Shown: positions 1,694 through 62,534, numbered from the stretch's first letter. The stretch is 64,000 bases of DNA from Malacoraja senta (GCA_038087875.1 CM075978.1:56482001-56546000), one strand, 5' to 3'. The notes: generated from the letters alone by a model not told the origin. Numbers and translations: made by a program.

Positions 1694-1967
1694 GCCAGTT
1701 CATCATAAATAGCTTTGCAACTTACTATTTTAATTCAATTTCAGTCCAGTTGGTATTCAGTTCAGTTGGTACAATGTAATATCGATTTATCATTTAGGAA
1801 ACCGATACAAGCAGATGAAAACTGTAATTTAAACTCCAAAACATATTTATTGCGAGTCTACAGATATGGATAAGAATATTTAAAGCATGACAAGGCATAA
1901 ACAGTGACCGAAAAAAGTTTACATTATTAACATCTAACAAAATTGAATAACAGCCCATATTACTCAC

Positions 1968-2084
1968 CAGTTCCTGAGGTGCAAAATTAGCCGAGTCAGA
2001 ATCCACTGACCAGTAACAGTAATCAAAGCTAAACTCCATATTACGCTGCCTTGAATCGCCAGGGCTATCAAGCCGTGGGTCCAA
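1968..2084 (-). CDS. STARD9: STARD9 (KIF16A) coding exon 3, kinesin motor N-terminal part
   Basis: 117 nt, acceptor ccag and donor gtgagt, phase 0/0; LDPRLDSPGDSRQRNMEFSFDYCYWSVDSDSANFAPQEL matches the STARD9 motif FDYCYWSV...Q. Confidence 0.93.
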
Positions 2085-24951: not shown

Positions 24952-24954
24952 TAA

Positions 24955-26216
24955 CACATCCTTTTCACCCTACTGCCCTCATTTCCTCTTCCCGTCTCCC
25001 GTTAAGGCCCCTTCCGCATTCTCCTGTCCCACCACATATTCTCACACTCCCTCCCAACCTACCTCCCCCACTCTTGCCAACCACCCCCTCATCACGTCCG
25101 CCAGCTCCCCTCCCCATACGGTCCCGTCGTAGCCCCCTCTCACATCCTGTCCCTTTAACCCCCCTTCCCATCCCCACTCATCATGTGCCTCCAATCCCCT
25201 ACCCCCTTCCTGCCCCACCCTCCCCTTTATCGGACACCCTCCTCTCCCGCAATACCCCTTCCTCCATCCTTCCGACCGTCTCCCCTCGCATCCCTCCGAC
25301 CGCCCCCCCCATTCTCCTCTGACCCCCCCATCCATCTGAACCCTGCCTCCCCTCCCACCGACCCCCTCTCCCCCACACCAAATCCCTTCAACCCTTCCCC
25401 ATTCCTCTGACCCTCCCGTCCCACCCACTCTCTATCCCCCTTCACTTCTCTCCTCTAGCCTTCTTTCCCAATCCATCATCTCTCCTCCCAAAAGTCCTTT
25501 ATTCTGCTCCTTACTCACCCTACTTGAACCCTCTTCCCTTCTCTCCTGCACGAAACATAATTCTCTCACCTACCCCCTCCACCTCACTGCACGCCTCTCC
25601 ACCCTCACCCCTACACTCTCCTCCTCATCCCCTCCCTCCCAACTCCCCCTCGCCTTTCCACCCATCTCACTCTTCCCCTTGCAACACCTCTCCCCCATCA
25701 CTGCTTCCCCTCCCCTCTTCTCTCCCAACACTCCTCCCCCCCCCTCATTCCTCCCCTTTCCCTCTCCCCAATATGCCTCCCTCAGCTACTCATTCCTTTC
25801 ACCACCTCCCCTCTGCTCTTTCCACCCTCACACTCCTCTCCCTCACCTCCTCCTAAACCCATCGCCTCGCTCCTCCACTAAATTACCCCTCCCTTCTCAC
25901 CCTCCCCATATCTTACTGCTCCCTTCCCTCACCACTCCACTCTTCACTGCTTCCCCTCTCCCTCATCCATTCCCCTCTCCTCCCTCATCTCTTCTCCATC
26001 ACCCTTCTCTCTATCCTTCCTTCCCCCAAACTATCTTACTCCCCCTCCCCGACCTCCCCCTCCACTCCCCCTGACATTCCTCCCTCCCCCTCTTTTCCTT
26101 CCCCTCCATTGCTGCTCCCCTTCCCAACCTCAGTCCCCTCCATGACTTCTCCTCCCTCTGTCCTCCCTCCTCCCTCTCTTTCTCTCCACGACCTCCTCAA
26201 CTCCCCTCCCTCTCAC
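24955..26216. repeat. ~1.25-kb C/T-rich low-complexity tract (G/A-rich on the STARD9 sense strand) at the start of intron 1
   Basis: Plus strand is almost devoid of G over most of the tract, with many CCC runs. Confidence 0.9.
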
Positions 26217-26263
26217 CTCTTGCTCAGCGGACGGACCCTCACGGCCACTTTCACATTCGCCAT
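26217..26263 (-). CDS. STARD9: STARD9 coding exon 1 (start codon)
   Basis: ATG at 26263-26261; MANVKVAVRVRPLSK(R); 47 nt coding, then donor gtgaga; the phase-2 junction completes Arg with exon 2. Confidence 0.95.
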
Positions 26264-37697: not shown

Positions 37698-38356
37698 TGC
37701 AATTGATTTACTTGTATCCAGTGTTTGGTTTTAAAAATCTGAAATAAATGATAGTAAATTTGTTATTAATTCTTGGGACGTGGGCTTCACAGGCTGAGCC
37801 AACATCTACTGGCCCATCTCTAGTTGCCCTGCAGAAGGTGGTGGTGAGTTGCCTTCTTAACCACTGCAGTCGAGGTGCGGTTTATGCACAATGCTGTTGG
37901 GGTGGAGTTCCAGGATTTTAAGCCAGAAACATTAGATACTAAATATATTAATTATGTAGACATCTTTTTATGTCATTTCCATCACTTGGAAAAGCCACAT
38001 AAATTGAAAGTGAACAAAATGAATGGTTGAAAACTTTCTATGGCAGTTAAAAACTGGGATGCTGGGGGGACACAAGAAGCAGAAAAAGCAGTGAGTTTGG
38101 TCACAGTTGAATGCAGAGCTGTGATTCAGTGAAGTGCGGATAAACAACACCAGCCATCCGGCAGCTGTGGAGAGAACAGTCAACATTTCAGAACTCAGTG
38201 AAGTGCGTGGCCTGAAACATTAACCTAACTCTCCCCCAGAACAGGCACCCACAGATCCAGCATTTTCTGTGTTGATAATAAAACTACACATTGTCTAAAT
38301 TGGAACACTTTTCTAATTCAGAAACCGTGAGAAATTTTTGGGTAACAGCTAGATTC

Positions 38357-38369
38357 TGCCATCTAGTGG
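38357..38369 (-). promoter_or_regulatory. Candidate CTCF-binding motif
   Basis: Minus strand CCACTAGATGGCA, a close match to the CTCF core consensus, in apparently non-repetitive intergenic DNA. Confidence 0.45.
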
Positions 38370-38939
38370 GGACCAGAAAATAATTTTCAATCCACACAAA
38401 ACACGTTAAAACTGAGGTTATGATTAAATTAACTGTTTTCATTCGTCCATGATAAAAAAAATTTAAAGGGCCAACTAAGTTAACTGCAGTTTATAGAGAG
38501 CGTGCGGAACAGGGGCCCAGGGAGTTTACAGGGAGAGAGGAACAGGGGCCCAGTGAGTTTACAAGGGTGTGGGGAATGGCTCCCCGATGACTAGAAGCCG
38601 AACCATTGAGATTTCTGAACAATGGGAGAGTGGATTATCAGAGGTTTACTGTGGCTTGTTGACATCTCTGGCAGCATCATCATTCAGATAACGATTGCTC
38701 TAGATGCCCCACCATTCAATATGATCACAGCTAATCTCCCAAAGCCTCATTCCCTCCTCTATGTTAGACCCACAGAGGCATCAATACCCTAGTTTTTTTT
38801 TAAAATGTATCTATCTCCTTTTTAAATAGTACTTCTAATCATTCGGCCTCTACAACTCTCCAGGACAGAAAATTCTGGAGATTCATCCTGTCTGAGAGAA
38901 GAGACTTCACACACTTCACTTTAAATGACCACTTCTTGT

Positions 38940-40952
38940 CCGCTGGATTTCATTAAGAAATGTGTGGAGGACTGCATCCCTACAAAAACCTTCCGAGTGT
39001 TTCCCAATCAGAAACCTTGGATGAACTTTGAGCTCCTCTCTCTCCTGAAGACCAGACACCAGGCCTTCATGTCTGATGATACAGTGGTCTACAAGAAGTC
39101 CAGATACGACCTTGGTAAGGCCATCAAAAAGGCCAAAAGGGACCTGCTCCAAACTGGAGGAAGAAACAGATGTTCGGCGGCTGTGGCAGGGCCTGAATGC
39201 AATCACCTCTTACAAGGCGAAATCAGGAGGCAGCTCGAATGTCGGCGAAACATCACTCCCTGATGAGCTCAATGCGTTTTACGCACGCTTTGATAGGGAG
39301 AACACCGATGTGCCTTCCCGAGCCCCCATTCGCTGTGATGGTATTTCAGTCTCAGTCACAGAGGCCGACGTCAGGAAATCCTTCAGAGGGGTGAACCCTC
39401 GAAAAGCTCCTGGACCTGATGGTATACCTGGTCGTGTTCTAAAAACCTGTGCGGACCAACTGGCTGGAATTTTTACGGACATTTTCAACCTCTCACTTCT
39501 GAGGTCTGAGGTTCCCACCTGCTTCAAAAGGGCATCAATTATACCAGTGCCCAAGAAGAGTAAGGTGAAGTGCCTCAATGACTATCGACCTGTGGCACTA
39601 ATGCCTGTGGTGATGAAGTGCTTTGAGATGTTGATCATGGCGCAGATCAACTCCTACCTCGACAAAAACCTGGACCCACTGCAGTTCGCTTACCGCCACA
39701 ACAGATCAACGGTGGATGCGATCTCGCTGGCCCTCCACTCCGCTCTGGACCACTTGGACAACAAAATCTCATATGTCAGGCTGTTATTCATCGATTACAG
39801 CTCGGCATTTAATACAATCATCCCATCCAAGCTGGTTACCAAACTCGCAGAACTGGGTCTCTGCGCATCCCTCTGCAATTGGATCCTCAACTTCCTCACT
39901 CTCACACCAGTCTGTTCGTATTGGTGGAAATGTGTCAGACTCGATAACAATCAGCACGGGAGCACCTCAAGGCTGCTTGCTCAGCCCCCTGCTGTACTCA
40001 CTCTATACTCATGACTGCGTAGCCGGTCATAGTGCGAACTCCATCATCAAGTTCGCTGACGACACCACTGTTGTGGGACGTATCACTGATGGGGATGAGT
40101 CAGAGTATAGAAGAGAGATCGAGCAACTGTCCATATGGTGCCAGCACAATAACCTGACCCTCAACACCAGCAAAACCAAGGAACTGATTGTGGACTTTGG
40201 AAGGAGTAGGATGGGGACCCACAGTCCCATTTATATCAACGGGTCGATGGTTGAAAGGGTCAAGAGCTTCAAATTCCTGGGCGTGCACATCTCTGAAGAT
40301 CTTTCCTGGTCCGAGAACACTGATGCCATTATTTAGAAAGCACATCAGCGCCTCTACTTCCTGAGAAGATTACGGAGAGTCGGTTTGTCAAGGAGGACTC
40401 TCTCTAACTTCTACAGGTGCACAGTAGAGAGCATGCTGACCGGTTGCATCGTGGCTTGGTTCGGCAACATGAGCGCCCTGGAGTGGAAAAAACTACAAAA
40501 AGTAGTAAACACTGCCCAGTCCATCATCAGCTCTGACCTCCCTTCCATCGAGGGGATCTATCGCAGTCGCTGCCTCAAAAAGGCTGGCAGTATCATCAAG
40601 GACCCACACCATCCTGGCCACACACTCATCTCCCTGCTATCTTCAGGTAGAAGGTACAGGAGCCTGAAGACTGCAACGACCAGGTTCAGGAATAGCTACT
40701 TCCCCACAGCCATCAGGCTATTAAACCTGGCTCGGACAAAACTCTGAACTTTAATAGCCCATTAACTGTTATTTGCACTTTATCAGTTTATTTATTCATG
40801 TGTGTATATATTTATAGAATGGTATATGGACACACTGATCTGTTTTGTAGTCAATTTCTACTATGTTCTGTTGTGCTGAAGCAAAGCAAGAATTTCATTG
40901 TCCTATCAGGGACACATGACAATAAACTCACTTGAACTGGAACTTGAACTTG
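38940..40952 (+). mobile_element. Rex1/Babar-type LINE, 5'-truncated
   Basis: ORFs 39076-40014, 39716-40336 and 40385-40747 with KAPGPDGIPGR, FIDYSSAFNT, KFADDTTVVG; (acttga)n tail. Confidence 0.93.
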
Positions 40953-41039
40953 GATTGAGACCCTTCCAGCAGATACATATCAACCCGTTTCCACTGGTGG
41001 AAGTCTCATCATTTTGATTCCATCCGATTTCCCCTTGTC

Positions 41040-43028
41040 AATAGACATATACAATAGGTGCTCCTGCGACCCTCATTCGGCCCTTCGAGCCAGCACCGCC
41101 ATTCAATGTGATCATGGCTGACCATCCACAATCAGTACCCCGTTCCTGCCTTCTCCCCATATCCTCTGACTCCACTATCTTTGAGAGCCCTATCAAACTC
41201 TCTCTTGAAAGTATCCAGAGAACCGGCCTCCACGGCCCTCCGAGGCAGAGAATGTCACAGACTCACAACTCTGTGTGAAAAAGTGTTTCCTCATCTCCGT
41301 TCTAAATGCCTTACCCCTTATTCTTAAACTGTGGCCCCTGGTTCTGGACACCACCAACATCGGGAACATGTTTCCTGCTTCTAGCGTGTCCAAACCCTTA
41401 ATAATCTTAAATGTTTCAATTAGATCCCCTCTCATCCTTCTAAATTCCAGAGTATAGAAGCCCAGCCGCTCCATCCTCTCAGCATATGACAGTCCCGTCA
41501 TCCCGGGAATTAACCTTGTGAACCTATGCTGCACTCCCTCAATAGCAAGAATGTCCTTCCTCAGATTAGGGGACCATAACTGCACACAATACTCCAGGTG
41601 TGGTCTCACTAGAGCCCTGTACAACTGCAGAAGGACCTCTTTGCTCCTATACTCAAATTCTCTTGTTATGAAGACCAACATGCCATTTGCTTTCTTCACT
41701 GCCTGCTGTACCTGCATGCTTACTTTCGTTGACTGATGAACAAGGGCCCCCAGATCCCGTTGTACTTCCCCTTTTCCCAACTTGACACCATTTAGATAAT
41801 AATCTGCCTTCCTGTTTTTGCTACCAAAGTGGATAACCTCACATTTATCCACATTAAACTGCATCTGCCATGCATCTCCCCACTCACCCAACCTGTCCAG
41901 GTCACCCTGCATTCTCATGGCATCCTCCTCACAGTTCACACTGCCACCCAGCTTTGTGTCATCTGCAAATTTGCTAATGTTATTTTGAATCCCTTCATCT
42001 AAATCATTGATGTATATTGTAAATAGCTGCGGTCCCAGCACCGAGCCTTGCGGTACCCCACTAGTCACTGCCTGTCATTCTGAAAGGGACCCGTTAATCC
42101 CTACTCTTTGTTTCCTGTCTGCCAACCAATTTTCTATCCATGTCAGCACTCTGCCCCCAATACCATGTGCCCTAATTTTGCCAAATAATCTCCTATGTGG
42201 GACCTTATGAAATGCTTTCTGAAAGTCCAGGTACATCTCCCTTGTCCATTTTACTAGTTACATCCTCAAAAAATTCCAGAAGATTAGTCGAGCATGATTT
42301 CCGCTTCGTAAATCCATGCTGACTCAGACCGAACCTGTTACTGCTATCCAAATGTGTGGCTATTTCATCTTTTATAATTGACTCCAGCATCTTCCCCACC
42401 ACGGATGTCAGGCTAACTGGTCTATAATTCTCTCTCTCCCGCCTTTCTTAAAAAGTGGGATAACAATAGCTACCCTCCAATCCACAGGAACTGATCCTGA
42501 ATCTATAGAACATTGGAAAATGATCACCAATGCGTCCACGATTTCTAGAGCCACCTCCTTAAGTACCCTGGGATGCAGACCATCAGGCCCTGGGGATTTA
42601 TCAGCCTTCAGTCCCATCAGTCTATCCAACACCATTTCCTGCCTAATGTGGATTTCCTTCAGTTCCTCCGTCACGCCAGATCCTCTGGTCACTACTATAT
42701 CAGGAAGATTGTTTGTGTCCTCCTTAGTGAAGATGGATCCAAAGTACCTGTTCAACTCATCTGCCATTTCCTTGTTCCTCATAATAAATTCACCTTTTTC
42801 AGTCTTCAAGGGTCCAACTTTGATCTTAACTAATTTTTTTCTCTTCACATACCTAAAGAAGCTTTTACTATCCCCCTTTGTATTCTTGGCTAGCTTACCT
42901 TTGTACCTCATCTTTTCTCCCTGTATTGCCTTTTTAGTTATCTTCTGTTGCTCTTTAAACATTACCCAATCCTCTGGCTTCCCGCTCATCTTTGCTATGT
43001 TGTACTTCTCTTTTATTTTTATACTGTC
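41040..43028 (-). mobile_element. CR1 LINE ORF2 fragment
   Basis: ORFs 42408-42989, 42205-42402 and 41193-42068 (KSPGPDGLHPRVLKE, GVPQGSVLGP, KFADD); CR1 tail at ~41040. Confidence 0.95.
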
Positions 43029-43600
43029 TTATAAATTTCCGGGCTCCTATTGCCTCATCTTTACCATGGGGTCCCAGTCCCTTTAAACATGCATCTTCCC
43101 CCAGGAAGGAATCAAAACCCACTGGTTCTTCCTTGAACAGAGATCCATTCAGTTTCCCTCTACTAACACTCTCCTCCACTCTCCTATGCTCCCGAGATAT
43201 TAACCACCTATACGATATGTACAATTTATGTTTTTGTGTGCTGTCCGAGTCTGTGTCTGTGATGTTGCTGCAAACAAGATTTTCGTTGTAGCTGTACCTC
43301 ACCTTCCTTGTGCATCTGACAATAAACCCAATTCAACCTGACTTGTGAATCAAGCGCACACCCCATTCCGTGGCCCTGTATGTCACCCTGTCAGTGGCAG
43401 GTTTCAATATTTAGATGAAAGTGCCAGCACTTGAAGAAATTGCAACAGAAATACAGCAAATAATTTATCTTTTGCATTTTCCTTATTTATTAGGAAATGG
43501 TTCTTTAATAAATAGCTCAATAAAAATGTGTACAAAAAGTTCATTTTTTTTAGGGCAAGAGATTTAATACTGTTCCAGCCAACCAACCATACCATCGAGG

Positions 43601-47639: not shown

Positions 47640-48614
47640 TAGCAATGTTACAAAATTTTGAGATTTTCAAAATCGTCTGTAATTTATCCCATCAGATAAA
47701 GCATAAAAAGAAGTTTAATTTGACACCTAATTCACTTTCATATCTTCAGTATTAAAAAAGTTATGGCCATTTTCATTCTCGGAAATTAGCATCTTGTTTT
47801 TGCTTTTCCATTGACTTAACACAAAAGCTGTGATCGAGGACAGTCAAAAGCCCATAACTTTCTTAAAAATTAAGAGAACTGAAAGACATTTTCAGTTATT
47901 ATAGATTGAAGCATTCTGAAACAAATATGAAACAATCTTACTTAGATGACATGAAATTAAAGCATATAATTAGTTAGTTACCTAATTGTAGCTAATTACA
48001 AAATTCATTTACTAGATCTAAACATCTATCAATTTCTTAAGAATAGATTAACATTTTTAAATAGCCTAAGTGTCCAAATAACATTCACACAAGAATTCAC
48101 AATATAACATAATTTTTTTATCTCATTGTCATGGGCATTTAAATCATCTTGCGAGTGGGGTTTTCTGGAACGCGATAATTTGGAACATTGATTTGCGGTG
48201 AATTTAACCCCGTATCGGCATGAAAAATTCTGCCGTTAGTTTGGGGAAAAGAATCACCGTTTCGCATTAAAAAATGTGAATTAAAGGCTTCTTAAGAAGC
48301 ACTTTTATACAAAAAAATAAACTGCTTATGTTTACCTGTCCCGTGCGTGAAATCCGTCCCCGTTGTCGGCGTTGACGGCTTTCGAAGCTGATTTTAAAAT
48401 AAATCCAGCGCTGACATTGTCGATCGAATAAAATAAAAAAATACACAAAACGCCCATCGGAACGATTTTTCAGCAAACGTTTGCACTCCAACGAAATATA
48501 ATACAGGACAAGGTAGGAGGAACCTGCGTTTTAACCCCACCCCCCCTCAAAGGCACCAAAATCGCGCACATGGTCAGTGGTAGAATTGCAGCGCCGCTTA
48601 TTGTAACATACCTA
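47640..48614. mobile_element. Non-autonomous DNA transposon with a 7-bp TSD (hATw-like), copy B
   Basis: TIRs tagcaatgttacaa and ttgtaacataccta; TSD ggtagag at 47633-47639 and 48615-48621; the first ~490 bp are an inverted homologue of the right end of copy A. Confidence 0.8.
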
Positions 48615-50147
48615 GGTAGAGGTTGGTGTTTGTGGTCACTAACTCTCACTGGGGCTCCCTGATATTGAAGGAAACCCCCTCCCTCCCAATGTCCCAACTG
48701 TCTATATGGAGGTCTGAGACTGATGCCTCACTGATGTTGCCTGACCCGATGAGTACTTCATGAATGTTCTATTTGTAAGGTCCAAAATGTGCCAGAATGT
48801 GCAGACAGAATGTGTGTGCCTTTTTTGTCTTTTCCGCCATAGGAAAACCAGACCTCTTTTTTTAAGTAGGATTAAAAACATTTAAAATTTGTTTGTCTCC
48901 ATTTCAGTCAACACCAAGTATCAGGACAATGAAAATTTGCTTTGAACAGAATGAAATACGGTGACAATGGTGAGTATGAATAAAGTGAAGACAATGACTG
49001 AAGTGACAGCCCAGCACACATCCACACATGCGTGATGAGAAAGCTCCTGCCTCATCTCATTCTGTTAGTGCTCCTAGTGAGAGCTCTCCACCTTCACCAT
49101 ACTCACGTCAAGGGGCCAGTGTGCAGGGTAATTCAGTGGATCACTCCTGCTCCTCGAACGCGGTACCTTCCTTAGTTGGACCCCCTCTCCTCACCTGTGG
49201 GATGATATTACAAGCACTCCACTACCTCCACCCGGTTCCAAACCACAATGGCAGCACAATTCCCACGGACATCTTTGGATCCTGATTCCCACATTCCAAC
49301 TGGTTTACTGACTGACACCCTACAAGCTGTACAGATGGGAATGCACTGACCTCAGCCTGAGGATGCTCAGTGTCAATCGACAGGAGGAGTTCGGAGATCG
49401 CTCAGATGTTCTCTCCGACCTTTAACAACAGTTGAGGATCAATCAACATTGCAGACCACGATAAAGATAACAGGGGATCAGGAAGCCACTTTTAATTCAG
49501 ATCTGCATGCATTCTTTGACCTGTTGTAGCCCTCGAAACATTAATAAACCCTCATTAATACATCTGTAAGAGTTGGAAGCCAGTTTTGTTACATCAACTT
49601 TGGGGATTTCTTCAGCTTTAAATATCCTGTGGTAATCATAAAAACAGTATTATAGGTCTGACCCGAGAAAGGTGAAAGTGCTTTCTTTCTCAAACCAGGC
49701 TTGGTAAAGGTGCCAACTCAGGAGTTCATTGAACCACAAAATTCTATGTGGATGTCTTGTTCTAGCAAGATGCTTCTGCGAATGGCTGATTATGGACTAA
49801 AGCTGCAAAACCCAATGTCAAAGTTAAAAAATTGTAAATAAAATAAACATTTCTGGTTTATATCAAGGTGACATGATCCCCGAAAAAGTGCAAGACAATC
49901 TTGATTTAAATCATACTTTTTAAAATTAAATATAGATCAGTGGAATACATTTCTTGCAAAGAAATATATTCTAAAAGTTGCAATTTTTGCAACAATTCCA
50001 GATTAAGAAGAATTTGTCTTTATAAACACTGATTCATAATTCCTATAGACAGAATATTCATCGGTAAAGATCATCTGTTCATGTGAATTCTGAGAACATA
50101 TTTCAAAATGATTCAACAAGTTTCAAAACCCAAATGCTTAATAACCT

Positions 50148-50360
50148 GGAGACATAAGGAATTACAGAAGATAGACACAAAATTACTCCAGCATTTTGTA
50201 TCTATCTTTGGTTTAAACCAGCATCTGCAGTTCCTTCCTACACATGAGGAATTACAGATGCTGGTTTACAAAAAAAGACACTTTGTGCTAGAGTAACTCA
50301 GCGAGTCAGGCAGCATCTCTGGACAACACAGATAGGTGATGTTTCGGGTCAGGACCCGAA
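50148..50360. mobile_element. Two nested Penelope-terminus copies
   Basis: A pLTR interrupted by a collapsed foldback; duplicated cat(a/g)aggaattacaga at ~50154 and ~50243. Confidence 0.6.
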
Positions 50361-50903
50361 CTTCATGATTGAACTATGTCCTGCTGGGGTGTATGAAAGA
50401 AACCCCCAGGAAACTGGTGTCAACCTGTCTCCAGAGGAAGGAGGAACTATGACAACCATGGACCATAGTGCCAACCCACACATGACTGGAAATTCTGTCC
50501 ATGAAGGAACATGTTAAAGGCAGTGAGAAACACAGGGCTGCAATAACCAGGATTCAGTGCTGTGAGATGAGTAAACCAGTGATCAATAAAATCCTCCAAC
50601 TGACCACTGCACACTTTGAGGTACACTTGGAGGTTTATCAAGGATTGAAACATCTGATTTGGTCTTTAGTGTTAATAAATAATGCTATTGTACAAAACTG
50701 CTTGTGTAGGTGTCAGCTGCTTTATCTACAGCTTGACCTTCTCCTGCACAACTGGTATTATATAATAATCTGTGTAGGCACTGTCCAGGGGACTGTTCAA
50801 CTCTAGTTTTCTGCACTCAAACCAAAAGACAGGTGCAATGTTTTTAAAATTAAACATAATTTCCAACCTATTCCTCTTACGTTCCAGCATCTCCCTAGTC
50901 GCT

Positions 50904-51988
50904 TCAGGTGCTGTTTACTATCTCTCCCAGAGTGGAGGTCTCAGCTCCAATGATACCACTTTCTTGTTCTTGTTGCATGAAGTCCTCCAAGGGAGAGCTA
51001 GGGGAGCAGGGAGGGGTGCTCAGCTCGGCTAGCTCAGGAGGCTCTTCCTCTGATGTCTGCAGCCTCTGCAGGTCCAGGATGCTGTTGATGGCGCTCTGCA
51101 GGTGCTGATTCAACGCGCTGTCCTGGGGACTGTCGCTGGAGAAGCTGCCGTTCTCCTCCGACTCAGACCTACGCCGCTTGGGCCGAGGGAGAGACAACTC
51201 CCAGGGCAGGTGGCAGATGGAGTCCACCTCCATCAGACCCCGCGCGATGGTGTCCTCCACCTCGTTGCTTGTGCGGTCGCCCCACCTCCCTCCTGGCCGA
51301 CCCCTGGTTCTGTACGGCAAGCTGCTGCCTGCATTCCTGCTGTCGGAGGTCATGTGCCGAGCTCCAGTGCCCAGTGGGCAGCAGCTAAGACTGACCTTCT
51401 GGTCGTCTCCAAGTCTACTTGCAGCACTGTCCTGTGGCAGGTATGTTCTGGTTGGATCAGGTACCAGAATGGGGCTGCAACAACAAGGGCGATTCATTTT
51501 GCCTTTCGCAAGGTGGAGCCTTTGTTTCGACAGGTCCCTGGTGCCCAAACGTTCCAGCAGCCGTCTCTCAGCCAGGGACGGGCCGGTGCAATTGCAAACT
51601 CTGTTGCTGTGATTGAAGGAGCTTGGAGTACAGCCTCTGGTACCTAAGAGCTGCTTGACTGGACTTACAGGTAGATGGTCAAATTCTGTGTTATGGACAA
51701 CCTGGTTGTAACCCGCCTCCTGCTTTATCTTCAGCTTGAGTCCACTTCTGCTTCTGACTGTGTAGATTTTCGGAGGGCTGGGGGGGCTGGAGACAACGGG
51801 ATCTTCTCCAGCCGGCGAGGCTCTCACACCAGCGTCCAAGGGCCAGCTCCTGGCCTGCCTGATATCCAGCTCGGGGGCTGCGAGCTGCTTTGTACTTTGA
51901 ATAAGCATATTGGGAGCAACAAGAAGACAAGCAGAGGTTGGTGGAGAGTTATCGATGTCTGGTTGGAGAACCGATGAAATATATGCAT
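50904..51988 (-). CDS. BICRA: BICRA/GLTSCR1-family protein, last coding exon (orthology to BICRA vs a further paralogue unresolved)
   Basis: Acceptor tttttag at 51989-51990, TGA at 50904-50906; motifs GLKLKIKQEAG..VVHNT, KRRRSES and SFSSDSPQDSALNQHLQSAINSILDLQ match the BICRA C-terminus; phase agrees with the upstream exon. Confidence 0.88.
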
Positions 51989-52624
51989 CTAAAAATAAAT
52001 GAAACAAACATTCTCAACACTAATATCGAATTAGGAGCAGCAGTGAGTCATCAAACCTTTCGACTCAGCTCAAATATTAATCCTTAACCTCAACTACTCT
52101 CCTTTCTATCACTACTTGCTCTCAATCATATCAAGAACTTTGTCAATCTCAGCCTTGGATGATTGGGAATCTATGATTCTCTGGCTTGAGAAATGCACAG
52201 ATTTACAATTCTCTGCATCAGTTTCTCCTCAACTCAGTCGAAAACCTCAGAACAAGATCCTTGAAGAGGACTGAGACTGAAAGAGATGCATTGTGCCCTT
52301 AGAACAGGCAAACATATGCTATATCATTCTTCGATTCTAATGACTGACGGGAAGGACTTTGGATCTTCCTACTTCAATAGCCAGCAAAAAGAGGAGTGGA
52401 ATGGTCCTGTGAGCGAGGATAATGTCCAAGGTTTTCGGGAGAAGGGGATTGAGGCCGACGGGATTGCTCTGCTGGCAGCCAGTGTGGGCACAATGGGTGG
52501 AGTTAACGGCCGGTGTCACAATCATGATGCTGGCAGGGTTTGGCTTTGAGCTCCCTCTACTCTGCTGGAGAAATACTCCAAGAGTGGAATTCATTGCGTG
52601 AGAACCGTCCTCATTTCAGTCTTA

Positions 52625-52992
52625 GGTTTGTCTGCTAAGTTTCAGGTTAGTTTACTGTCACCTGCAGCGAGGTACAGTGAAAAGCTTCAGAAAGACAAGA
52701 TATGATTACAATTGAGCCATTCACAGTGCATAGATACATGACAAGGGAGTAACGTTTAGTGCAAGGTTAAGCCAGCAAAGTCTGATCAAGGATAGTCCAA
52801 GGGTCACCCATGAGGAAGATAGTAGTTCAGTACTACTCTCCAGTTGTGGTAGGATGATTCAGTTGCCTGATAACAGCTGGGAAGAAACTGTCCCTAAATC
52901 TGGAGGTGTGTGTTTTCACACTTCGATACCTTTTGCCTGATGGGCGAGGGGAGAAGAGGGAGTGGCCAGGGTGCGATTCGTCCTTGATTATG
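52625..52992 (-). mobile_element. Rex1/Babar LINE 3' fragment
   Basis: IIKDESHPGHSLFSPRPSGKRYRSVKTHTSRFRDSFFP. Confidence 0.85.
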
Positions 52993-53834
52993 TTAATTGT
53001 GTAAAAAGATCCCACTCCTAACTTGCTTGCAACTAATTACCAGGGTAGGGTCCCAGCCCACAGTCACTCACCTTCAGAGCTGAACGGCCCAAGTGTCTGC
53101 ACGGCTCCTCATCACATTGAGCTCTCACACCTTACAGTGCACCACTGTTTGAGTGTGCCTCTCTGGCGGCTGAGAAGGGGCTCCAAGTAGTACATTGGAA
53201 ACTGTTTTACAACTTTCTATTTGCCTTCAAAGGAAGTCTGGACAAGAGTGGCAGCTTTGGCTCAGTAGGAATCACTCGAGTCAATTGATTTTTTAGTTGG
53301 CTCAAGTCCCCCTGTGGAGATCTCGTTGGTTCTCCAGAGGGAGTGCTGCATTGTAGGAACTGGAGTCACCTGGAATGTAGCTAACCTGAGGTCCACCTGC
53401 TCACCTCAATGGCACAGAGATAAAGAGTGCAGAGGCTGGAGGTCACTTTGTGTCTGGAAAACATTTGTCCTTCAACCAGTATCACTACAATAGGTTATTG
53501 CCATCTATGGGACCCTGCTATGTAAAATTGGCCAATATCTCTGCTGACTTCAACTGGACAGGAAAGTGGCCGATGATGCCCAACGGTTGGGAGGAGTGTT
53601 TTTTAGAGGTAATTCCCACAATTTTTAATACTACCGCATATCTGTAACAAATATCCAAAAATATAGCACTAGATTGCTTTGATTTTTATGACTCAACCTA
53701 TAATTGCTAGGTTATAGGTTGTCAGTCATAAAAATGTAAAAAGATTTGACTTGAATTACTGCCCAGCCGTGGGCATATGAACGTCCACACCTCCGAAGTT
53801 TGCTAATGTTAAAGTATTGAAAGAGCTGTCTCAC

Positions 53835-53937
53835 CGGGACTGTCCCTGGCCAGTTGTCTTGCTTCCAGGAAAGCCACCTTTTCTTCCTGAATGAACATCC
53901 GATTGATCATCACCATCTCAGCGGAGGATTTTGTCCT
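53835..53937 (-). CDS. BICRA: BICRA-family penultimate coding exon (GLTSCR1 domain)
   Basis: 103 nt, acceptor tttcag and donor gtgaga; RTKSSAEMVMINRMFIQEEKVAFLEARQLARDSP(D), cf. BICRA SAEMVMIDRMFIQEEK. Confidence 0.93.
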
Positions 53938-54834
53938 CTGAAAAACAGAGAAAATTAAGCAGTGAGCACCAGGACCAATGGTTTACCAAGATTGGAGCAG
54001 GAGAAGGCCCTTCAGCCCCTCAAGTGTGCTTCACCATTCAATCTGATCACATGTTGTCTGCACCTTGCCTTTGGTTGAAAATACCAGGGACTTTCAAAAT
54101 ATATCAAGTTCATTGCAGACTCAAGAACTGCAGATACTAGAAATTTAAGCAAAATACCTCAATGGCTTCTGGAATACATCAAGGGCTTAGGCAGCATCTG
54201 TGGAGGGAATGGATAATTCACTCAAACCTGTTCCAGTTTTTAGGCCAATTTACAAGCTTTATACTTTGCTAACACGTTTATTGATAGGTACAGTCAGACC
54301 ATTCATCCTGTTTTTTTTCCTCACATACACTATGTACCCATTCTTTAAAAGTTAACCGCAGCTGGCTTACTGGCGTGCCTTTAATGTACTTTACTAACTA
54401 TCATAAGGGGAAAGGGAGTGGGATAGTGGAGGAAATGGGTGCAAATCCAAGTGGGACACAGGGATTGGTTAGTTACCAAAAATTGGAGAATTCAATGATC
54501 ATTGCGTTGTCAAGTGTAATACGAGATGCTGTTCCTTCAGCTTGTGTTTGGCCTCACTCTGATGATGGAGACGGCCCAGGACAGAAATGGGAATGGGAAG
54601 GGGAGTTAAAATGGTTAGCAACCGGGAGATCCAGCAGGTCTTGGCAGATCGAGCATAAGTATTCAGCAAAACGGTCGCCCAGTCTACGCTTGGTCTCGTG
54701 GTTGCAGGGGTAAGTACCTGGAGAGGGGGTGGTTTGGGTGAGAAGAGATGAGTGAACCAAGGCGTGCAGAGGGAGTGGTCTCTGAAGAAGGCAGAAAAGG
54801 GTGGGGATGGGAAGATGTGGCTGGTGGTGGGATC

Positions 54835-55140
54835 ACTTTAGACTTTAGAGATGCCAAGTGTAAACAGGCCCTTCGGCCCACTGAGTCCATGCCAACTAGT
54901 GATCACCTCATACATTAGCATTATCCTACACACTAGGGGCAATCTTCTATTTTACAGAAGTCAATTAACCTATAAACACATCTTTGGAATGTTGGGGAAA
55001 ACAGAAGCACACGGAGTAATCCACGCGGTCACATGGAGAATGTATAAACTCCATACAGAGAGCACCCGTAGTGAGAATCGAACCCAGGTCTCTGGCACTT
55101 AAAGGCAGCAACAATACTGCTGTTCCACTATGCCACCCTA
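54835..55140 (-). mobile_element. HE1-like SINE
   Basis: actttagactttagagat...aaacaggcccttcggccca...gaatcgaacccaggtctctggcac...ccactatgccacc. Confidence 0.85.
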
Positions 55141-55500
55141 GTTGAAGGTGGTAGAAATGTTGAAGAATGATGTGTTGGATGCTGAGGCTGGAGGGTTGAA
55201 AGGAAAGGACTAAGGCAATCCTATCCTTGTTCTGTCTTGGGGTAGGGGGCGTATGGGTAGAACTGTGGGAGCCATCTACAACAGCAGGCGGGAAACCACG
55301 TTTACTAACGAAAGAGAACATCTCGGATGTCCTAGAGTGGAAAGCCTCATCTTGGGAGCTGATGCAACGGAGATGGAGAAATTGAGAGGGGATGGTGACT
55401 TTGGAAGAGGCATGGTGAGAGGAGGTGTAGTCCAGATAGCTGTAGGTCAGTGGGTTTATAGTAGACATCAGTTGATAGTTTGTCTCCTGTGTTGGTGACA

Positions 55501-56412
55501 AGTCAAGTCAAGTTAAGTCAATTTTTATTCGTCGCTTGCACATAAAGTGCAAGTGAAATGAATTTGCCAGCAGCGGTACAATAAAAAAAGAACACACAAT
55601 ACACAATAAAAATTTAACACAAACATCCACCACAGCATTCATCACTGTGGTGGAAGGCACAAACTTCAGCCAGTCCTCCTCCATTTTCCCCCGTGGTCGG
55701 GACCTCAACCCTCCGCAGTCGCCGTTGCGGGCGTCCAGATGTTCAGACAAGGTAAGTCCAGAATCGGTGCTTCCCCACCGGAGACTGCGGCTTCAAGATG
55801 GTGTAGGCCGCAGGGCGGCGGTCGAAGATTTAAAGTCCCCGCCGCGCCGCAGCCAGAAGCACCGCAGACTGCAGGTCCGGTGGTCGGAGCTCCCCTCCAG
55901 GGATCCCCGGCGAGGGACCACGCTCCGGATGGTAAGTCCCCGCCGCGCCCGCGGTAGAAGTAGGCCATGGGCCGGCAGTCGGAGCTCTTCTCCTCCGGAG
56001 TCCCCAACGAAGGATCGCAGGCTCCAGACGCCGCCAGCTGGAGCTCCGCAGACCGCGTCTTCAGGCTGCCGCGGGCCAGGGAACGGAGCGCTCCCCTCCG
56101 GCGGCCCCCGACAAGGGCTCACCCGCTCCGCGACGAGAGTCCGCGCTGCGCCCGCAGCTGAAGCCCCGGGCACGTCTCCTAGAAAGGCCGCACCGATCCT
56201 CGATGTTAGGCCACGGGGAGGCGACATGGAAAAAGTTGCCTCTCCGTGGAGGAGGCGACCAAAACGGTTTCTCCCTTACCCCCACACACTGCCCCCCACA
56301 CAAGACACACAGAGAGACATTAAAAACATACATTAAGACACACTAAAAAAACAAAAGAAGTAGAAAAACAAACACGCTGCTGGCAGGGCTGCCGGTTCGC
56401 AGCGCCCCCACC
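55501..56412 (-). mobile_element. GC-rich non-autonomous retroelement with a Rex-type 3' tail
   Basis: Minus-strand 3' end atttcacttgcactttatgtgcaagcgacgaataaa...(acttg)n; interrupts a PLE RT sequence; 4-bp flanking repeat gaca. Confidence 0.7.
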
Positions 56413-57149
56413 GACAACTGATCAAGAAAGGGGAGAGCGGTATCAGAGGTAGTCCAAGTGAATTTGAGGACAGTGTGTATGTTAGTGGTAACGTTTATGA
56501 AGTTCTGCAGGGTAGCAGGAGGCCGCTCCAGTGCAGTCATCGATAGAGTGGAGAAAGAGTTGGAGGATGGTGCCAGTGTACGTTCAGAACAAGGACTGTT
56601 CGATGTAACCTACAAAAAGTCAGGCCCAACTGGGGCCCATGGCTTCATCTTTAACTTGATGAAAGTGAGAGGAATCAAAATAGAAATTGTTGAGGGTGAG
56701 GACAAGTACTGCCAGGCAGAGGAGAGTGTTAGTAGATGGGAACTAATTGGGTCTCTGTTCAAGAAAGTACTGGAGGGCCTTGAGACTTTCCTAGTGGGAA
56801 ATGGAGAGATAAAGGTGGTGGACATTCACGGAAAGATGGGTCAATCGGACCTAGGAATTGAAGGTTATTGAAGTGTTGAAGAGCGTGTGACATGTCTTGG
56901 ATGTAGGTTGGACAAAGGGCAGATAAGATAGCATCAAGGTATTTAGAGCTGTACATTTGGGGATTGGGGGGTGGGTGGGTGGGTGGCGGTGGCAGGAGCA
57001 GGCAGAAACAATGGGTCTGGCAGGGCAGTCTTGTTTGTGGATTTTGCGAAGGAGATAGAAGTGGGCAGTGTGGGGCTGGGGAACATTAAGGTTAGTGGCT
57101 GTGGTAGGCAGCCTGGTGTTTATCTCTGGAGTCTGCAGATGTTGTCTAT

Positions 57150-58130
57150 GTGAACATCAGCAAGGCTTTTGACAAGGTTCCGCATGTTGGCTGCTCTTGA
57201 AGGTTAGATCACATGGGATCCAAGGAGAGCTAGCCAATTGGAGAGCGAATTGGCATCATGGAAGGAAGCAGAGGGTGATGGTGGAAGGTTGTTTTTCAGA
57301 CTGGAGGTCTATGACTAGTGATGTGCCTCAGGGATCGGTGCTGGGCCCATTGTTATCTGTGGTTTTTATAACAACGATTTGGATGAGAACAAAGAAGGCA
57401 TGATTAGAAAGTTTGCAGATGACACTAAAGTGGGTGTTATCATAGATAGTGAAAATGATTATCAAAAATTATAGCAGGATCTTGATCAGTTGGTTAAGTC
57501 AAGTCAATTTTATTTCTATAGCACATTTAAAAACAACTCTCGTTGACCAAAGTGCGTTACATTAGTGCATGTACTAACGTGCTACAAAGTGGTACATAGA
57601 TCAACAATACATACATAAATACATACATACAGCGCTCCCTCAGAGTGGGAGTGAAGTGGACTGATTCGGTCTAAGGGTCCGAACCTGAAACAGCACACAT
57701 CCATGTTCTTCAGGGATGCTGCCTAACCCACAGAGTTACTCCAGCACTTTGTGTCTTTTTTTGTAAACAGGATGGTCAAGAAGGCTTTCAGTACATTGGC
57801 CTTCATCAGTCAAGGCATTGAATATAGAGGTTGGGATGTTATGTTACAGTTGTACAAGACATTGTGAGGCCGTATTCAAAGTATTGTGTTCAGTTTTAAT
57901 CACCCTGCTATAGGAAGGTTGTTCTTATGTTCTTAAGCTGGAAAAAGTGCAGAGAAGATTTACGAGGATGCTGCCAGGACTTGAGGGCCTAAGGAATAGG
58001 GAGAGGTTGGGCAGACTAGGACTTTATTCCTTGCAGTACAGGATGATGAAGGGTGATCTTACAGAGGTGTATAAGACCATGAGGGGAATAGATAGGGTTA
58101 ATTCACAGAGTCTTTTCCCCTGCGTAGAGG
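57150..58130 (+). mobile_element. Degenerate CR1 RT fragment containing an L2 tail (57497-57645, minus) and a pLTR (57660-57770)
   Basis: SHGIQGELANW...VPQGSVLGP; QRRFTRMLPGLEGL; the L2 tail is of the same type as 28075-28221. Confidence 0.8.
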
Positions 58131-58844
58131 AATAAAAAAGATTCTATCTTTACATCAGCGATAAATATTGAATAAATATAAAGGAGGAAAAAGTGCAGGT
58201 CCACAATAAAAAGGGAAAGGAGGTCTGTGTTCAGAATGAGAGGTAATCTCATTGGAAACGTGTAGAATTGCTCTGGTTTGACAGAGTGGATGTTGAGCCT
58301 GTTCTCACCCGTCATGGGTCATGATCTGGGCATATTTGTGCAGGATAACCGACTGACCTTTCATCAGAGAGATAAGAAGAGTTGTCTTCACTAAGAGGGT
58401 TGGAGCTCCGTGTCCGGGAGGACAGCGGACTCGATACAGAACTGAGATGGGCAGATATTGGGCACTCTGAGTGTTGTGGTGAAGGTCAGGTCAAAAACTA
58501 TTTTCGATCTTAGGAAATCTGCACAAAAAGGATCTATGGCCTACACCTGATCCTATTCATTGATGTTCTACGCCAGGATAGCTCAAGTCTGCTTTGTACC
58601 TTTTAAGCCCTGATATTATTTGGTGCACTCAGAAGATAAGTGCTGTTACTGTAGTGTTCCTGGGCTTAAGGAGGGCAAAGAGAAATGGCCATCCTTCTTC
58701 TCCATCACCCACAGCTGGAGACTATTAATACTGAGTAAGGGTATGGGATCCATTGACCTCTGTTCCAAGGAAAGAACCCCTATGGTTGAGCTACATTTGT
58801 TTTTTGATCTCTGAAGATCATTTAAAATATCTTGAAGACCTTAC

Positions 58845-58939
58845 CCTGGACTCTTCGAAGAGCAGCATACGATATTTGTTCTGCATGGCCTGGGTCTGCT
58901 TGAGGAGATTTGTCGACACAACCTGAAACTCTTCATCCA
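58845..58939 (-). CDS. BICRA: BICRA-family coding exon (GLTSCR1 domain)
   Basis: 95 nt, acceptor ccgcag and donor gtaagg; (V)DEEFQVVSTNLLKQTQAMQNKYRMLLFEESR, cf. BICRA VDEEFETVSTQLLKRTQAMLNKYRLLLLEESR; the upstream exon was not found in the window. Confidence 0.93.
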
Positions 58940-62110: not shown

Positions 62111-62534
62111 TACAAAAGCAAACATTATTTGAAAATTGCATTGATTTTGTTTAGTCCACGTACGAGTTGGTCGCCTACTGTGTTTACCGTAAACAGTGAA
62201 TATAATTCATTTGTTCATATCATTAAGGCCAACCACCCAGCTAATTACATTGGCATTTTGCTCCTCCCCCCTCTCTGCAGCAAGAGACAATTTCAAGAAT
62301 ACCTTTGATAAAATCCACACTAGATGGCATTGTCCCCTCGCATACGTGATAGGGCAAAAGACTCAAAACAGTGTCTTCAATGGAATGAAACCGAGTGTTA
62401 CAATCGGGCTGCATAACTGAGGTCTGGTCCTTGCAGAATCTTTCAAGTAACCTGCATGTGTCATAATTAGAAAAGAGTTACTTCCAACAGAATAACACAA
62501 AATCTGGTCATTTTCCCACTCCTGCGTAGTCATT

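What the first reader, a model, noticed from the sequence alone, without database searches (positions are those of the whole stretch)
50904..58939. BICRA-family gene next to STARD9: candidate third BICRA/BICRAL ohnologue
Seen: three spliceable, in-phase, stop-free exons encoding a GLTSCR1 domain and BICRA C-terminal motifs, ending ~24.6 kb upstream of the STARD9 start on the same strand. The protein diverges from BICRA at normally conserved positions (MINRMF vs MIDRMF; AMQNKYRM vs AMLNKYRL) and ends in LGEIVNST, reminiscent of the BICRAL-type AAVNSIL terminus. Established: in human, BICRA lies at 19q13 beside EHD2 and BICRAL at 6p21 near UBR2/TTBK1, while STARD9 lies at 15q15 near UBR1/TTBK2/EHD4, where I know of no BICRA-family gene. 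Inference: this may be the copy from the 15q15 paralogon, retained in cartilaginous fish and lost in mammals. That would imply a third alternative defining subunit of the ncBAF/GBAF chromatin remodeller.
Basis: partly seen in the sequence, partly recalled or inferred. Interest (0 to 1): 0.72.

Follow-up and report, generated by a model that had tools for sequence, protein, structure and literature searches.

The report
Third BICRA-family gene in a skate
The window holds the 3' end of a real, spliced, selectively constrained gene for a chromatin-remodeller (GBAF/ncBAF) subunit that is neither BICRA nor, most likely, BICRAL; it belongs to a third gene line kept in sharks, rays, coelacanth and ray-finned fishes and not seen in land vertebrates, where databases model it under inconsistent names.

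Summary
On the minus strand, the three exons 58939-58845, 53937-53835 and 51988-50907 have AG/GT borders and join in phase. I found a fourth exon at 62451-62303. Together they encode a complete GLTSCR1 ("GiBAF") domain and a C-terminal tail. A kinesin-3 gene with STARD9-like motifs starts 24.6 kb downstream on the same strand.

The window comes from a skate (about 94-95% DNA identity to Amblyraja radiata). Against A. radiata the gene has no indels, keeps its splice sites and shows dN/dS 0.32. RNA-type contigs of a related species cover the exons and 3'UTR but not the unique intron sequence.

All sampled cartilaginous fishes have this gene plus a separate BICRA gene, which in a skate lies next to an EHD gene as in human. 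The coelacanth also has both genes.

In the tree the gene groups with a ray-finned-fish gene (zebrafish si:ch211-168d23.3), which sits between ERH and EXD2 (human 14q24). It does not group with BICRA.

So the third-ohnologue idea is largely supported. However, the gene is not restricted to cartilaginous fish and already has database models.

The main gap is that I could retrieve no BICRAL sequence, so "this is the fish BICRAL orthologue" remains a rival at about 0.2.

The parts
62303..62451 (-). Coding exon (149 nt) for the N-terminal part of the GLTSCR1/GiBAF domain (..LLERFCKDQ...LLPYHVCEGTMPSSVDFIK).
   Evidence: tblastn with the Rhinoraja orthologue P0001, 92% identity. AG acceptor and GT donor read directly. 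97% DNA identity to A. radiata with the donor conserved.
58845..58939 (-). Coding exon (95 nt) for the middle of the GLTSCR1 domain (VDEEFQVVSTNLLKQTQAMQNKYRMLLFEESR).
   Evidence: Splice sites read directly. Pfam PF15249 positions 43-76, E 3.9e-06. 99% DNA identity to A. radiata.
53835..53937 (-). Coding exon (103 nt) for the end of the GLTSCR1 domain (RTKSSAEMVMINRMFIQEEKVAFLEARQLARDSP).
   Evidence: Splice sites read directly. Pfam PF15249 positions 73-101. 100% DNA identity to A. radiata. In the RNA-type contigs, the depth in the 200-nt bin equals contig depth times 65/200 in all four runs, so coverage starts exactly at 53835.
50904..51988 (-). Last coding exon: 360 codons plus the stop at 50904-50906. 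It encodes a disordered tail with the family motifs GLKLKIKQEAG..VVHN, PKRRRSE, SFSSDSPQD..LNQHLQSAINSILDLQRLQ and a shortened ...TLGEIVNST end.
   Evidence: ORF listing. Acceptor read directly. phmmer hits P0001 at E 1e-207, 13 relatives at E below 1e-10 and 35 at E up to 1e-3. One contig of a related species ends its match exactly at 51988 and carries 214 further letters (record 22).
48700..50903 (-). Probable 3'UTR of at least about 2.2 kb, interrupted by a high-copy repeat at about 50100-50500.
   Evidence: Low-depth single-copy contigs from four RNA-type runs tile 48.7-50.9 kb continuously with the last exon. Unique intron stretches 52100-52299 and 53100-53499 have depth 0 in all four runs. 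This part is inferred, not proven.
26214..26263 (-). First coding exon of the downstream neighbour, a kinesin-3 gene (MANVKVAVRVRPLSKR, then GT donor), taken to be STARD9.
   Evidence: Motif scan and direct reading of the sequence. The STARD9 assignment comes from memory of the human N-terminus.
1965..2084 (-). A further motor-domain exon of the same kinesin (LDPRLDSPGDSRQRNMEFSFDYCYWSVDSDSANFAPQELV).
   Evidence: Translation. Best solved-structure matches are KIF13B and KIF1A motors, residues about 40-75.

Best explanation
The finding is the 3' third of an active protein-coding gene of a skate. Its product belongs to the BICRA/BICRAL (GLTSCR1-domain) family, which in mammals supplies the defining subunit of the GBAF/ncBAF chromatin remodeller. 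The gene is the skate member of a third, ancient orthologue line. That line comprises the cartilaginous-fish 'BICRA-like' genes, the coelacanth gene XP_064420756, and the ray-finned-fish gene that Ensembl projects as si:ch211-168d23.3. The line is separate from true BICRA, which skates also have next to an EHD gene. It lies in chromosome surroundings that correspond to human 14q24/15q15, whereas BICRA lies at 19q13 and BICRAL at 6p21. The most likely history is a whole-genome-duplication copy kept in fishes and lost on the way to tetrapods. Inferred mechanism: the intact GiBAF domain, whose core is predicted as two long helices, docks on the SMARCC/SMARCD coiled coil and BRD9. This would make a third, mutually exclusive flavour of GBAF. 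The long disordered remainder, with the shared N- and C-terminal motifs, would recruit partners such as BRD4. The gene structure, conservation, apparent transcription and tree position are shown here; the biochemistry is inferred. Within this line the skate copy is a somewhat eroded, faster-evolving version.
For: Gene reality: in-phase AG/GT exons. Pfam GLTSCR1 matches. Against A. radiata: 477 codons, no indels, splice sites kept, dS 0.056, dN 0.018, dN/dS 0.32, Fisher p 0.001. Contigs from four RNA-type runs of a related species cover exons and 3'UTR only and stop exactly at exon borders. Orthologue line: best hits are Rhinoraja LOC144597725 and the A. radiata 'BICRA-like' gene (90%). Next come Pristis, Narcine, seven shark genera and Callorhinchus, then Latimeria. 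Distinct from BICRA: the same species have a second gene that falls in a 100/100 BICRA clade with tetrapods. BICRA ends ..NGGLGARTxxR, whereas this line ends ..TLEEAVNSIL.. and has YHVC rather than YHVY. BICRA keeps an EHD neighbour in a skate and in a teleost. Link to the ray-finned-fish gene: the unrooted ML tree, when rooted on BICRA, gives (cartilaginous fishes,(coelacanth, ray-finned fishes)), which is the species tree. The first 26 residues are identical in the coelacanth gene and the ray-finned-fish genes (GTCLLDVLC..HGT), and this region was not used for the tree. Chondrichthyan members are the best non-actinopterygian hits of the bichir gene. Location: the teleost gene lies PSEN-ERH-gene-EXD2-NUMB, and the EXD2 neighbour is also present in Amia and Danio. 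The skate gene is followed by a kinesin-3 with STARD9-like motifs. Mechanism: 28 invariant domain columns are kept across all three lines. The model has helices 51-88 and 94-120, with block-mean pLDDT 88-95 over about residues 51-80 and 72-86 over 81-120. Literature: the GiBAF domain alone pulls down BAF155, BAF60a and BRD9 (bioRxiv 10.1101/445148), and GLTSCR1L binds the SMARCC1/SMARCD1 coiled coil through a long helix (PMC12708618).
Against: No tetrapod or fish BICRAL sequence could be fetched, so the tree has no BICRAL branch and no outgroup; separation from BICRAL is therefore argued, not shown. The BICRAL-like C-terminal ending (..AVNSIL..) would also fit orthology with BICRAL. Orthology between the skate gene and the ray-finned-fish gene rests on the tree and one N-terminal signature. 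Their immediate neighbours differ (kinesin versus EXD2), and no ERH, EXD2 or PSEN was found in the skate, sawfish or sevengill flanks available. The placement of the coelacanth gene is weakly supported (83/69; AU p 0.38 for the alternative). The run type of the 'RNA?' libraries is guessed, and two of them are flagged 'probably DNA'. The skate copy has changed otherwise near-invariant residues (D to N in MIDRMF, L to Q in AMLNKY). It has also lost the CDILQQSLQEANIT motif and the last residues of the tail, so its function may be weakened.
Confidence: 0.74

Rival explanations
1. The gene is simply the cartilaginous-fish (and coelacanth, ray-finned-fish) orthologue of BICRAL. The family would then have only two members in jawed vertebrates. 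Tetrapod BICRAL would be a fast-evolving, relocated version of the same gene.
For: The line's C-terminus (LQRLQ......TLEEAVNSIL..) and the YHVC motif resemble what I recall of BICRAL rather than BICRA (for this line; the BICRAL side is from memory). NCBI's name 'BRD4-interacting chromatin-remodeling complex-associated protein-like' is literally the BICRAL protein name. In every cartilaginous fish and in the coelacanth I saw only two genes, never three. The ray-finned-fish relatives are as distant from the skate domain (34-44% identity) as human or mouse BICRAL (37-40%). A fast-evolving orthologue is therefore conceivable.
Against: BICRAL lies at 6p21 beside UBR2/TBCC/TTBK1 (from my knowledge), the paralogous counterpart of the UBR1/TTBK2/STARD9 region. 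A relocation into exactly the sister paralogon is unlikely. The fish line sits in 14q24/15q15-type surroundings in both a teleost and the skate. Zebrafish literature uses 'bicral' and 'bicra', while Ensembl-derived names still carry si:ch211-168d23.3 for this line, which suggests three loci. Ensembl-derived UniProt names give this line no BICRAL name in coelacanth, chimaera or bichir. With the coelacanth gene as query, no tetrapod BICRAL reached the 287-bit cut, although tetrapod BICRA did.
Confidence: 0.2
2. The gene is a lineage-specific duplicate of BICRA that arose within cartilaginous fishes.
For: The skate domain is closer in identity to human BICRA (50%) than to BICRAL (37-40%). The protein-atlas nearest cluster is named BICRA.
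Against: Cartilaginous-fish BICRA genes group with tetrapod BICRA at 100/100, apart from this gene. The line is present in chimaera, sharks, rays and coelacanth, and it groups with a ray-finned-fish gene. It therefore predates the split of cartilaginous and bony fishes.
Confidence: 0.03
3. The skate copy is a decaying or non-functional relic whose open frame is kept by chance.
For: Skate-specific changes occur at otherwise near-invariant positions, the C-terminal motif is truncated, and an N-terminal motif is lost in A. radiata. The tree has a long skate stem branch of 0.29.
Against: There are 477 codons without a stop or indel between two skate genera. dN/dS is 0.32 (p 0.001) and all splice sites are kept. 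The gene is 90% identical to a third genus. Exon-limited, spliced contigs appear in four RNA-type runs.
Confidence: 0.03

Closest known systems
Ray-finned-fish gene 'si:ch211-168d23.3' (Ensembl/UniProt name in gar, Scleropages, Poecilia and Cyprinodon; RefSeq calls it 'BICRA' in most teleosts)
   Same: It lies on the same side of the tree relative to BICRA (100/100 split). It has the same C-terminal ending ..ALEEAVNSIL.., the LQRLQ motif and the YH(V/T)C motif. Its N-terminal 26 residues are identical to those of the coelacanth member of the skate gene's line. It is a third locus besides an EHD-linked BICRA.
   Different: It evolves much faster (LERLF instead of IDRMF) and has a shorter tail without the ELDIPQFSPMASS block. 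Its neighbours are ERH and EXD2, not a kinesin. Domain identity to the skate gene is only 34-44%.
BICRA (GLTSCR1), human 19q13.33, GBAF/ncBAF subunit
   Same: It shares the GLTSCR1/GiBAF domain with 28 shared invariant positions and 50% identity over 152 residues to human BICRA. It shares the GLKLKIKQEAG..VVHNT and SFSSDSPQD..EHLQSAI.SIL motifs. In sharks the N-terminus MDDEDGRCLLDVICDPQALNDFLHGS is the same.
   Different: It forms a separate clade. Its C-terminus differs (..NGGLGARTLNR), and it has YHVY rather than YHVC. BICRA keeps the EHD neighbour in a skate and a teleost, whereas this gene does not.
BICRAL (GLTSCR1L), human 6p21.1, alternative GBAF/ncBAF subunit
   Same: It shares the GiBAF domain, with 37-40% identity to human and mouse BICRAL. 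From memory, it has a similar ..AVNSIL.. C-terminal ending and the YHVC motif.
   Different: From my knowledge, it has a different chromosomal neighbourhood (UBR2/TBCC/TTBK1). Its domain identity to the skate gene is lower than BICRA's. No BICRAL sequence was available to place it in the tree, so the relation (sister paralogue or orthologue) is open.

Membership tests
BICRA/BICRAL (GLTSCR1-domain) protein family | GLTSCR1/GiBAF domain (Pfam PF15249) | tested here: met
   Exon pieces hit PF15249 at profile positions 43-76 and 73-101. The upstream exon supplies the first part. All full-length orthologues carry PF15249. 28 invariant columns are kept.
BICRA/BICRAL (GLTSCR1-domain) protein family | Long, mostly disordered protein with the conserved N-terminal motif MDDEDG.CLLD..CDPQALNDFLHG | tested here: inconclusive
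   The N-terminus lies outside the window. Shark, chimaera and coelacanth orthologues have the motif. The A. radiata model has a diverged version (MDEEDDMSLLDVICDSQALNDFLHGC). The Rhinoraja model starts differently, probably through a mis-modelled first exon.
BICRA/BICRAL (GLTSCR1-domain) protein family | Incorporation into BRD9-containing GBAF/ncBAF, mutually exclusive with the other paralogues | not testable with these tools
   This is inferred only from the conserved GiBAF domain. That domain is sufficient for BAF155/BAF60a/BRD9 binding in GLTSCR1L (10.1101/445148) and contacts SMARCC1/SMARCD1 by a long helix (PMC12708618). The model here has long helices 51-88 and 94-120.
BICRA orthologue group | Falls inside the BICRA clade | tested here: not met
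   The BICRA clade (23 sequences, including two skates) is separated at 100/100 from this gene.
BICRA orthologue group | EHD2-type neighbour directly downstream | tested here: not met
   The neighbour here is a kinesin-3. The true BICRA of Rhinoraja has an EHD gene 8.8 kb downstream, as does the teleost BICRA.
BICRA orthologue group | C-terminus ..NGGLGARTxxR | tested here: not met
   The alignment of C-termini shows ..TLGEIVNST here and ..TLEEAVNSILGD in other members of the line.
BICRAL orthologue group | Falls inside the BICRAL clade in a rooted tree | not tested
   No BICRAL sequence was returned by any of the capped searches. Only identities are available: 37% to human and 40% to mouse BICRAL, against 50% to human BICRA.
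BICRAL orthologue group | UBR2/TBCC/TTBK1-type neighbourhood | tested here: inconclusive
   Only one neighbour is visible in the window, a kinesin-3 with STARD9-like motifs. That points to the 15q15-type region instead, but the wider chromosome could not be read.
Fish 'si:ch211-168d23.3' orthologue group (third line) | Groups with it to the exclusion of BICRA, in species-tree order | tested here: met
   The tree gives ((ray-finned fishes, coelacanth),(cartilaginous fishes, BICRA)) unrooted. Rooted on BICRA this is the species tree. The inner node is weak at 83/69 and the alternative is not rejected. An N-terminal signature links coelacanth and ray-finned fishes.
Fish 'si:ch211-168d23.3' orthologue group (third line) | ERH/EXD2 (14q24-type) neighbourhood | tested here: not met
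   No ERH, EXD2 or PSEN exon was found in the window or in the 10-kb flanks of the A. radiata and Pristis genes, and the Pristis and Heptranchias flanks hold no called neighbour. Human 14q24 and 15q15 belong to one paralogon (from my knowledge), so this is a rearranged rather than a contradictory setting. Shared microsynteny is nonetheless not shown.

The most novel reading that the evidence does not exclude
Jawed vertebrates began with at least three GBAF-defining subunits. The third one, on the 14q24/15q15 paralogon, survives in cartilaginous fishes, coelacanth and ray-finned fishes, including zebrafish, and was lost in the tetrapod stem. If so, fish have a third, unstudied flavour of the ncBAF remodeller. 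Zebrafish models of BICRA disease would then need to take this extra paralogue into account.
Probability: 0.65. Interest if true: 0.5.

Novelty: new member of a known kind. Interest (0 to 1): 0.42.

Why it matters
GBAF/ncBAF is defined by BRD9 plus one of two mutually exclusive subunits, BICRA or BICRAL. BICRA is a human disease gene (Coffin-Siris syndrome 12) that is modelled in zebrafish. A third family member in fishes would mean a third possible complex. It is also a possible source of genetic compensation in zebrafish knock-outs. It would be a clear case of a whole-genome-duplication copy lost in tetrapods.

The practical point is annotation. One orthologue line is currently called 'BICRA' in teleosts, 'BICRA-like' in sharks, 'uncharacterized' in one skate, and si:ch211-168d23.3 in Ensembl-derived records. 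This invites mistaken orthology calls.

Retention or loss of one duplicate is otherwise a common pattern, and the gene itself is already modelled in public annotations. I found no paper text mentioning the zebrafish symbol.

Tried and rejected
- BICRAL retrieval. One exhaustive representative search and three word-index searches returned only this line, BICRA and the ray-finned-fish line. Fragments I first took for BICRAL (P0029-P0034) proved to be teleost members of the ray-finned-fish line, about 80% identical to the grass-carp gene.
- Solved structures. The Protein Data Bank has no chain with a GLTSCR1 domain.
- Protein atlas. It gave only 'BICRA' (0.89) and 'BICRA like' (0.79) cluster names. 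For the kinesin exon it gave nothing beyond 'kinesin'.
- AlphaFold DB clusters. They listed unnamed fish fragments only.
- Earlier notes of this scan. None mentions BICRA, BICRAL, UBR2, TBCC or TTBK1.
- Neighbour look-ups. They were limited to 10-kb flanks. No neighbour was seen for A. radiata, Pristis or Heptranchias. Latimeria, Rhincodon and A. radiata BICRA were not on record.
- Papers not held. Barish et al. 2020 and Alpsoy & Dykhuizen 2018 could not be read.
- EXD1 idea. I first thought the fish neighbour might be EXD1 (15q15). The exonuclease exon matches human EXD2 (6k17, E 7e-22) and the gene carries an HNH-like motif, so it is EXD2 (14q24).
- Other genes between this gene and the kinesin. 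The long ORFs there are LINE reverse-transcriptase debris.

Full report
**What is in the sequence**

The finding lies on the minus strand. Reading the DNA shows three exons with canonical borders:
- 58939-58845 (95 nt), acceptor cag|, donor |gtaagg
- 53937-53835 (103 nt), acceptor cag|, donor |gtgaga
- 51988-50907, acceptor tag|, stop at 50906-50904

The phases fit (1-0, 0-1, 1-end). The four exons join into 477 codons without a stop.

Pfam recognises the GLTSCR1 domain on both small exons, at profile positions 43-76 and 73-101. The new exon supplies the first part of the domain. The gene runs on upstream beyond the window. In Amblyraja radiata the orthologue spans 43 kb, and the window's end corresponds to about three quarters of the way along it.

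**Is it a live gene?**

The window is about 94-95% identical in DNA to A. radiata, so it comes from another skate. Across the 477 codons the two species differ by no indel, and every splice site is kept. dS is 0.056 and dN is 0.018, giving dN/dS 0.32 (Fisher p 0.001). A third genus, Rhinoraja, is 90% identical in protein.

I laid contigs of four 'RNA?' runs of a related species (96-97% identical) on 48500-54499. They tile the last exon and about 2.2 kb downstream at single-copy depth. They leave unique intron stretches (52100-52299 and 53100-53499) at depth 0 in all four runs. One contig stops matching exactly at the acceptor (51988) with 214 letters to spare. In all four runs the depth over the bin holding exon 53937-53835 equals the contig's depth times 65/200, so coverage begins exactly at the donor-side border 53835. 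This is the pattern of a spliced transcript. The caveat is that the library type is guessed by the tool, and two of the runs are flagged 'probably DNA'.

**Relatives**

An exhaustive profile search with the last exon and three word-index searches define three groups.
- This gene's line. It includes Rhinoraja LOC144597725 ('uncharacterized') and the A. radiata 'BICRA-like' gene. It also includes Pristis, Narcine, Pristiophorus, Heterodontus, Carcharodon, Heptranchias, Scyliorhinus, Mustelus, Rhincodon, Chiloscyllium, Stegostoma and Callorhinchus. Next comes the coelacanth gene XP_064420756.
- BICRA proper. It is present in the same skates, rays, sharks and coelacanth as a second gene, and in lungfish, tetrapods and teleosts.
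- A ray-finned-fish gene. It occurs in bichir, sturgeon, paddlefish, bowfin, gar and many teleosts. UniProt carries the zebrafish-derived name si:ch211-168d23.3 for it, and RefSeq mostly calls it 'BICRA'. After ray-finned fishes, its best hits are the shark genes of the first group.

**Tree**

I built a maximum-likelihood tree of 57 sequences from the domain to the C-terminus (490 columns, LG+C20+F+G4). It separates BICRA (100/100), the ray-finned-fish gene (100/100) and the cartilaginous-fish gene (98/91). The coelacanth gene sits between the last two (83/69).

Rooted on BICRA this is (cartilaginous fishes,(coelacanth, ray-finned fishes)), which is the species tree for a single gene. The AU test does not reject the alternative of coelacanth with sharks (p 0.38). 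That alternative is equally compatible with a single orthologue line.

Independent support comes from the N-terminus, which was not in the tree alignment. Its first 26 residues are identical in the coelacanth gene and the ray-finned-fish genes (MDDEDGTCLLDVLCDPQALNDFLHGT). Shark members keep the BICRA-like MDDEDGRCLLDVICDPQALNDFLHGS.

Shared motifs of the line against BICRA are YH(V/T)C for YH(V/L)Y, LQRLQ for LQQPQ, and the ending ..ALEEAVNSIL.. for ..NGGLGARTLNR.

**Neighbourhoods**

- Teleost BICRA sits beside NAPA-, EHD- and EIF3K-type genes. The Rhinoraja BICRA is followed 8.8 kb downstream, on the same strand, by an EHD gene. From my knowledge this is the human 19q13.33 arrangement.
- The ray-finned-fish third gene sits in the order Presenilin - ERH - gene - exonuclease - NUMB in Parambassis. 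The same exonuclease neighbour is present in bowfin and Danio. That exonuclease matches human EXD2 in the Protein Data Bank (6k17, E 7e-22). From my knowledge this is human 14q24.1, where no BICRA-family gene exists.
- In the skate window the downstream neighbour, 24.6 kb away on the same strand, is a kinesin-3. Its first exon reads MANVKVAVRVRPLSKR. A further exon reads ..FSFDYCYWSV.. and aligns to residues 40-75 of KIF13B/KIF1A motors. From memory these motifs are those of STARD9 (15q15), which I could not test with a tool.

From established paralogy maps (EHD1-4, FOS family, KLC1-4, UBR1/2, TTBK1/2), 14q24 and 15q15 together form one of four sister regions. The others are 19q13 (BICRA), 6p21/2p (BICRAL) and 11q13. 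This paralogon argument is my inference from knowledge. It fits a third whole-genome-duplication copy.

**What could not be done**

The tree therefore has neither a BICRAL branch nor an outgroup. I also could not count family members in this genome.

The only direct comparison is through a structure search. The skate-type domain is 50% identical to human BICRA and 37-40% identical to human and mouse BICRAL.

Several points argue against the rival reading that this line is the fish orthologue of BICRAL:
- The neighbourhoods described above.
- The use of 'bicral' and 'bicra' as zebrafish symbols, while si:ch211-168d23.3 persists for this line.
- The absence of a BICRAL name on the Ensembl-derived coelacanth, chimaera and bichir entries.
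- The absence of tetrapod BICRAL above the 287-bit cut when the coelacanth gene is the query.

I put the rival at about 0.2.

MINRMF, AMQNKYRM and the ..LGEIVNST end are real, but they are peculiar to skates. Sawfish, electric ray, sharks, chimaera and coelacanth read MIDRMF, AMLNKYR(M/L) and ..TLEEAVNSILGD. The A. radiata protein also has a diverged N-terminal motif and lacks CDILQQSLQEANIT. The skate stem branch is long at 0.29. The skate copy is thus a faster-evolving member that is still under purifying selection.

**Likely function**

The GiBAF domain keeps 28 invariant positions across all three lines. It is predicted as two long helices, 51-88 and 94-120. Block-mean pLDDT is 88-95 over about residues 51-80 and 72-86 over 81-120. 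The overall pTM is low, as expected for an isolated docking helix.

In GLTSCR1L this domain alone pulls down BAF155, BAF60a and BRD9 and is needed for nuclear localisation (bioRxiv 10.1101/445148). In the ncBAF reconstruction GLTSCR1L contacts the SMARCC1/SMARCD1 coiled coil mainly through a long helix (PMC12708618). I therefore infer, without having tested it, that the product enters a BRD9-containing GBAF-type complex as a third alternative subunit.

**Verdict**

The gene is not confined to cartilaginous fishes, and it is already modelled in public annotations under inconsistent names. I found no paper text for the zebrafish symbol.

The finding is a sound, moderately interesting case of a duplicate kept in fishes and apparently lost in tetrapods. 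It has practical weight for zebrafish BICRA models and for annotation. The one decisive test, a rooted tree with BICRAL plus a locus count, is still outstanding.

Noticed in passing
window 28814-43100, both strands: The 24.6-kb gap between the BICRA-family gene and the kinesin is filled with LINE debris. Five long ORFs hit reverse transcriptase RVT_1 (E 3e-31 to 4e-12). One ORF (30274-30879) hits the 'ALKBH8_N' Pfam model, which I read as part of the same retroelement rather than of a host gene.
   Followed up: partly
window 50100-50500 and 52500-53100: Two short stretches, one in the probable 3'UTR and one in the last intron, collect enormous contig depth (10^4-10^5) and many rearranged joints in all four runs. 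They are high-copy interspersed repeats.
   Followed up: no
window 24000-32000, especially 24950-26600: There is strong negative GC skew (-0.53 to -0.26) and GC up to 0.54 around and just downstream of the kinesin's first exon. Long plus-strand stop-free runs rich in P, S, T and L indicate a C/T-rich low-complexity tract in the promoter and first intron.
   Followed up: no
P0001 (Rhinoraja LOC144597725) and P0043 (A. radiata), outside the window: The Rhinoraja RefSeq model starts with a non-family N-terminus (MDGAQSVPTL...) and a PRPA(I/T)PSTP repeat, probably a mis-modelled first exon. The A. radiata model has the family start in diverged form.
   Followed up: partly
database names of the orthologue line: One orthologue line carries four kinds of name: 'BICRA' in most teleosts, 'BICRA-like' in sharks and rays, 'uncharacterized protein' in Rhinoraja, and si:ch211-168d23.3 in Ensembl-derived UniProt entries. 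Meanwhile the true, EHD-linked BICRA of several rays is also called 'BICRA-like'.
   Followed up: partly
L005 (Parambassis) 20205-23091; L001 and L002 downstream flanks: The convergent neighbour of the ray-finned-fish gene is EXD2, with an HNH-like motif (..DHNSHDILLLCTSCH....WSVDHNHSK..) conserved from bowfin to teleosts.
   Followed up: partly
I did not examine it.
   Followed up: no
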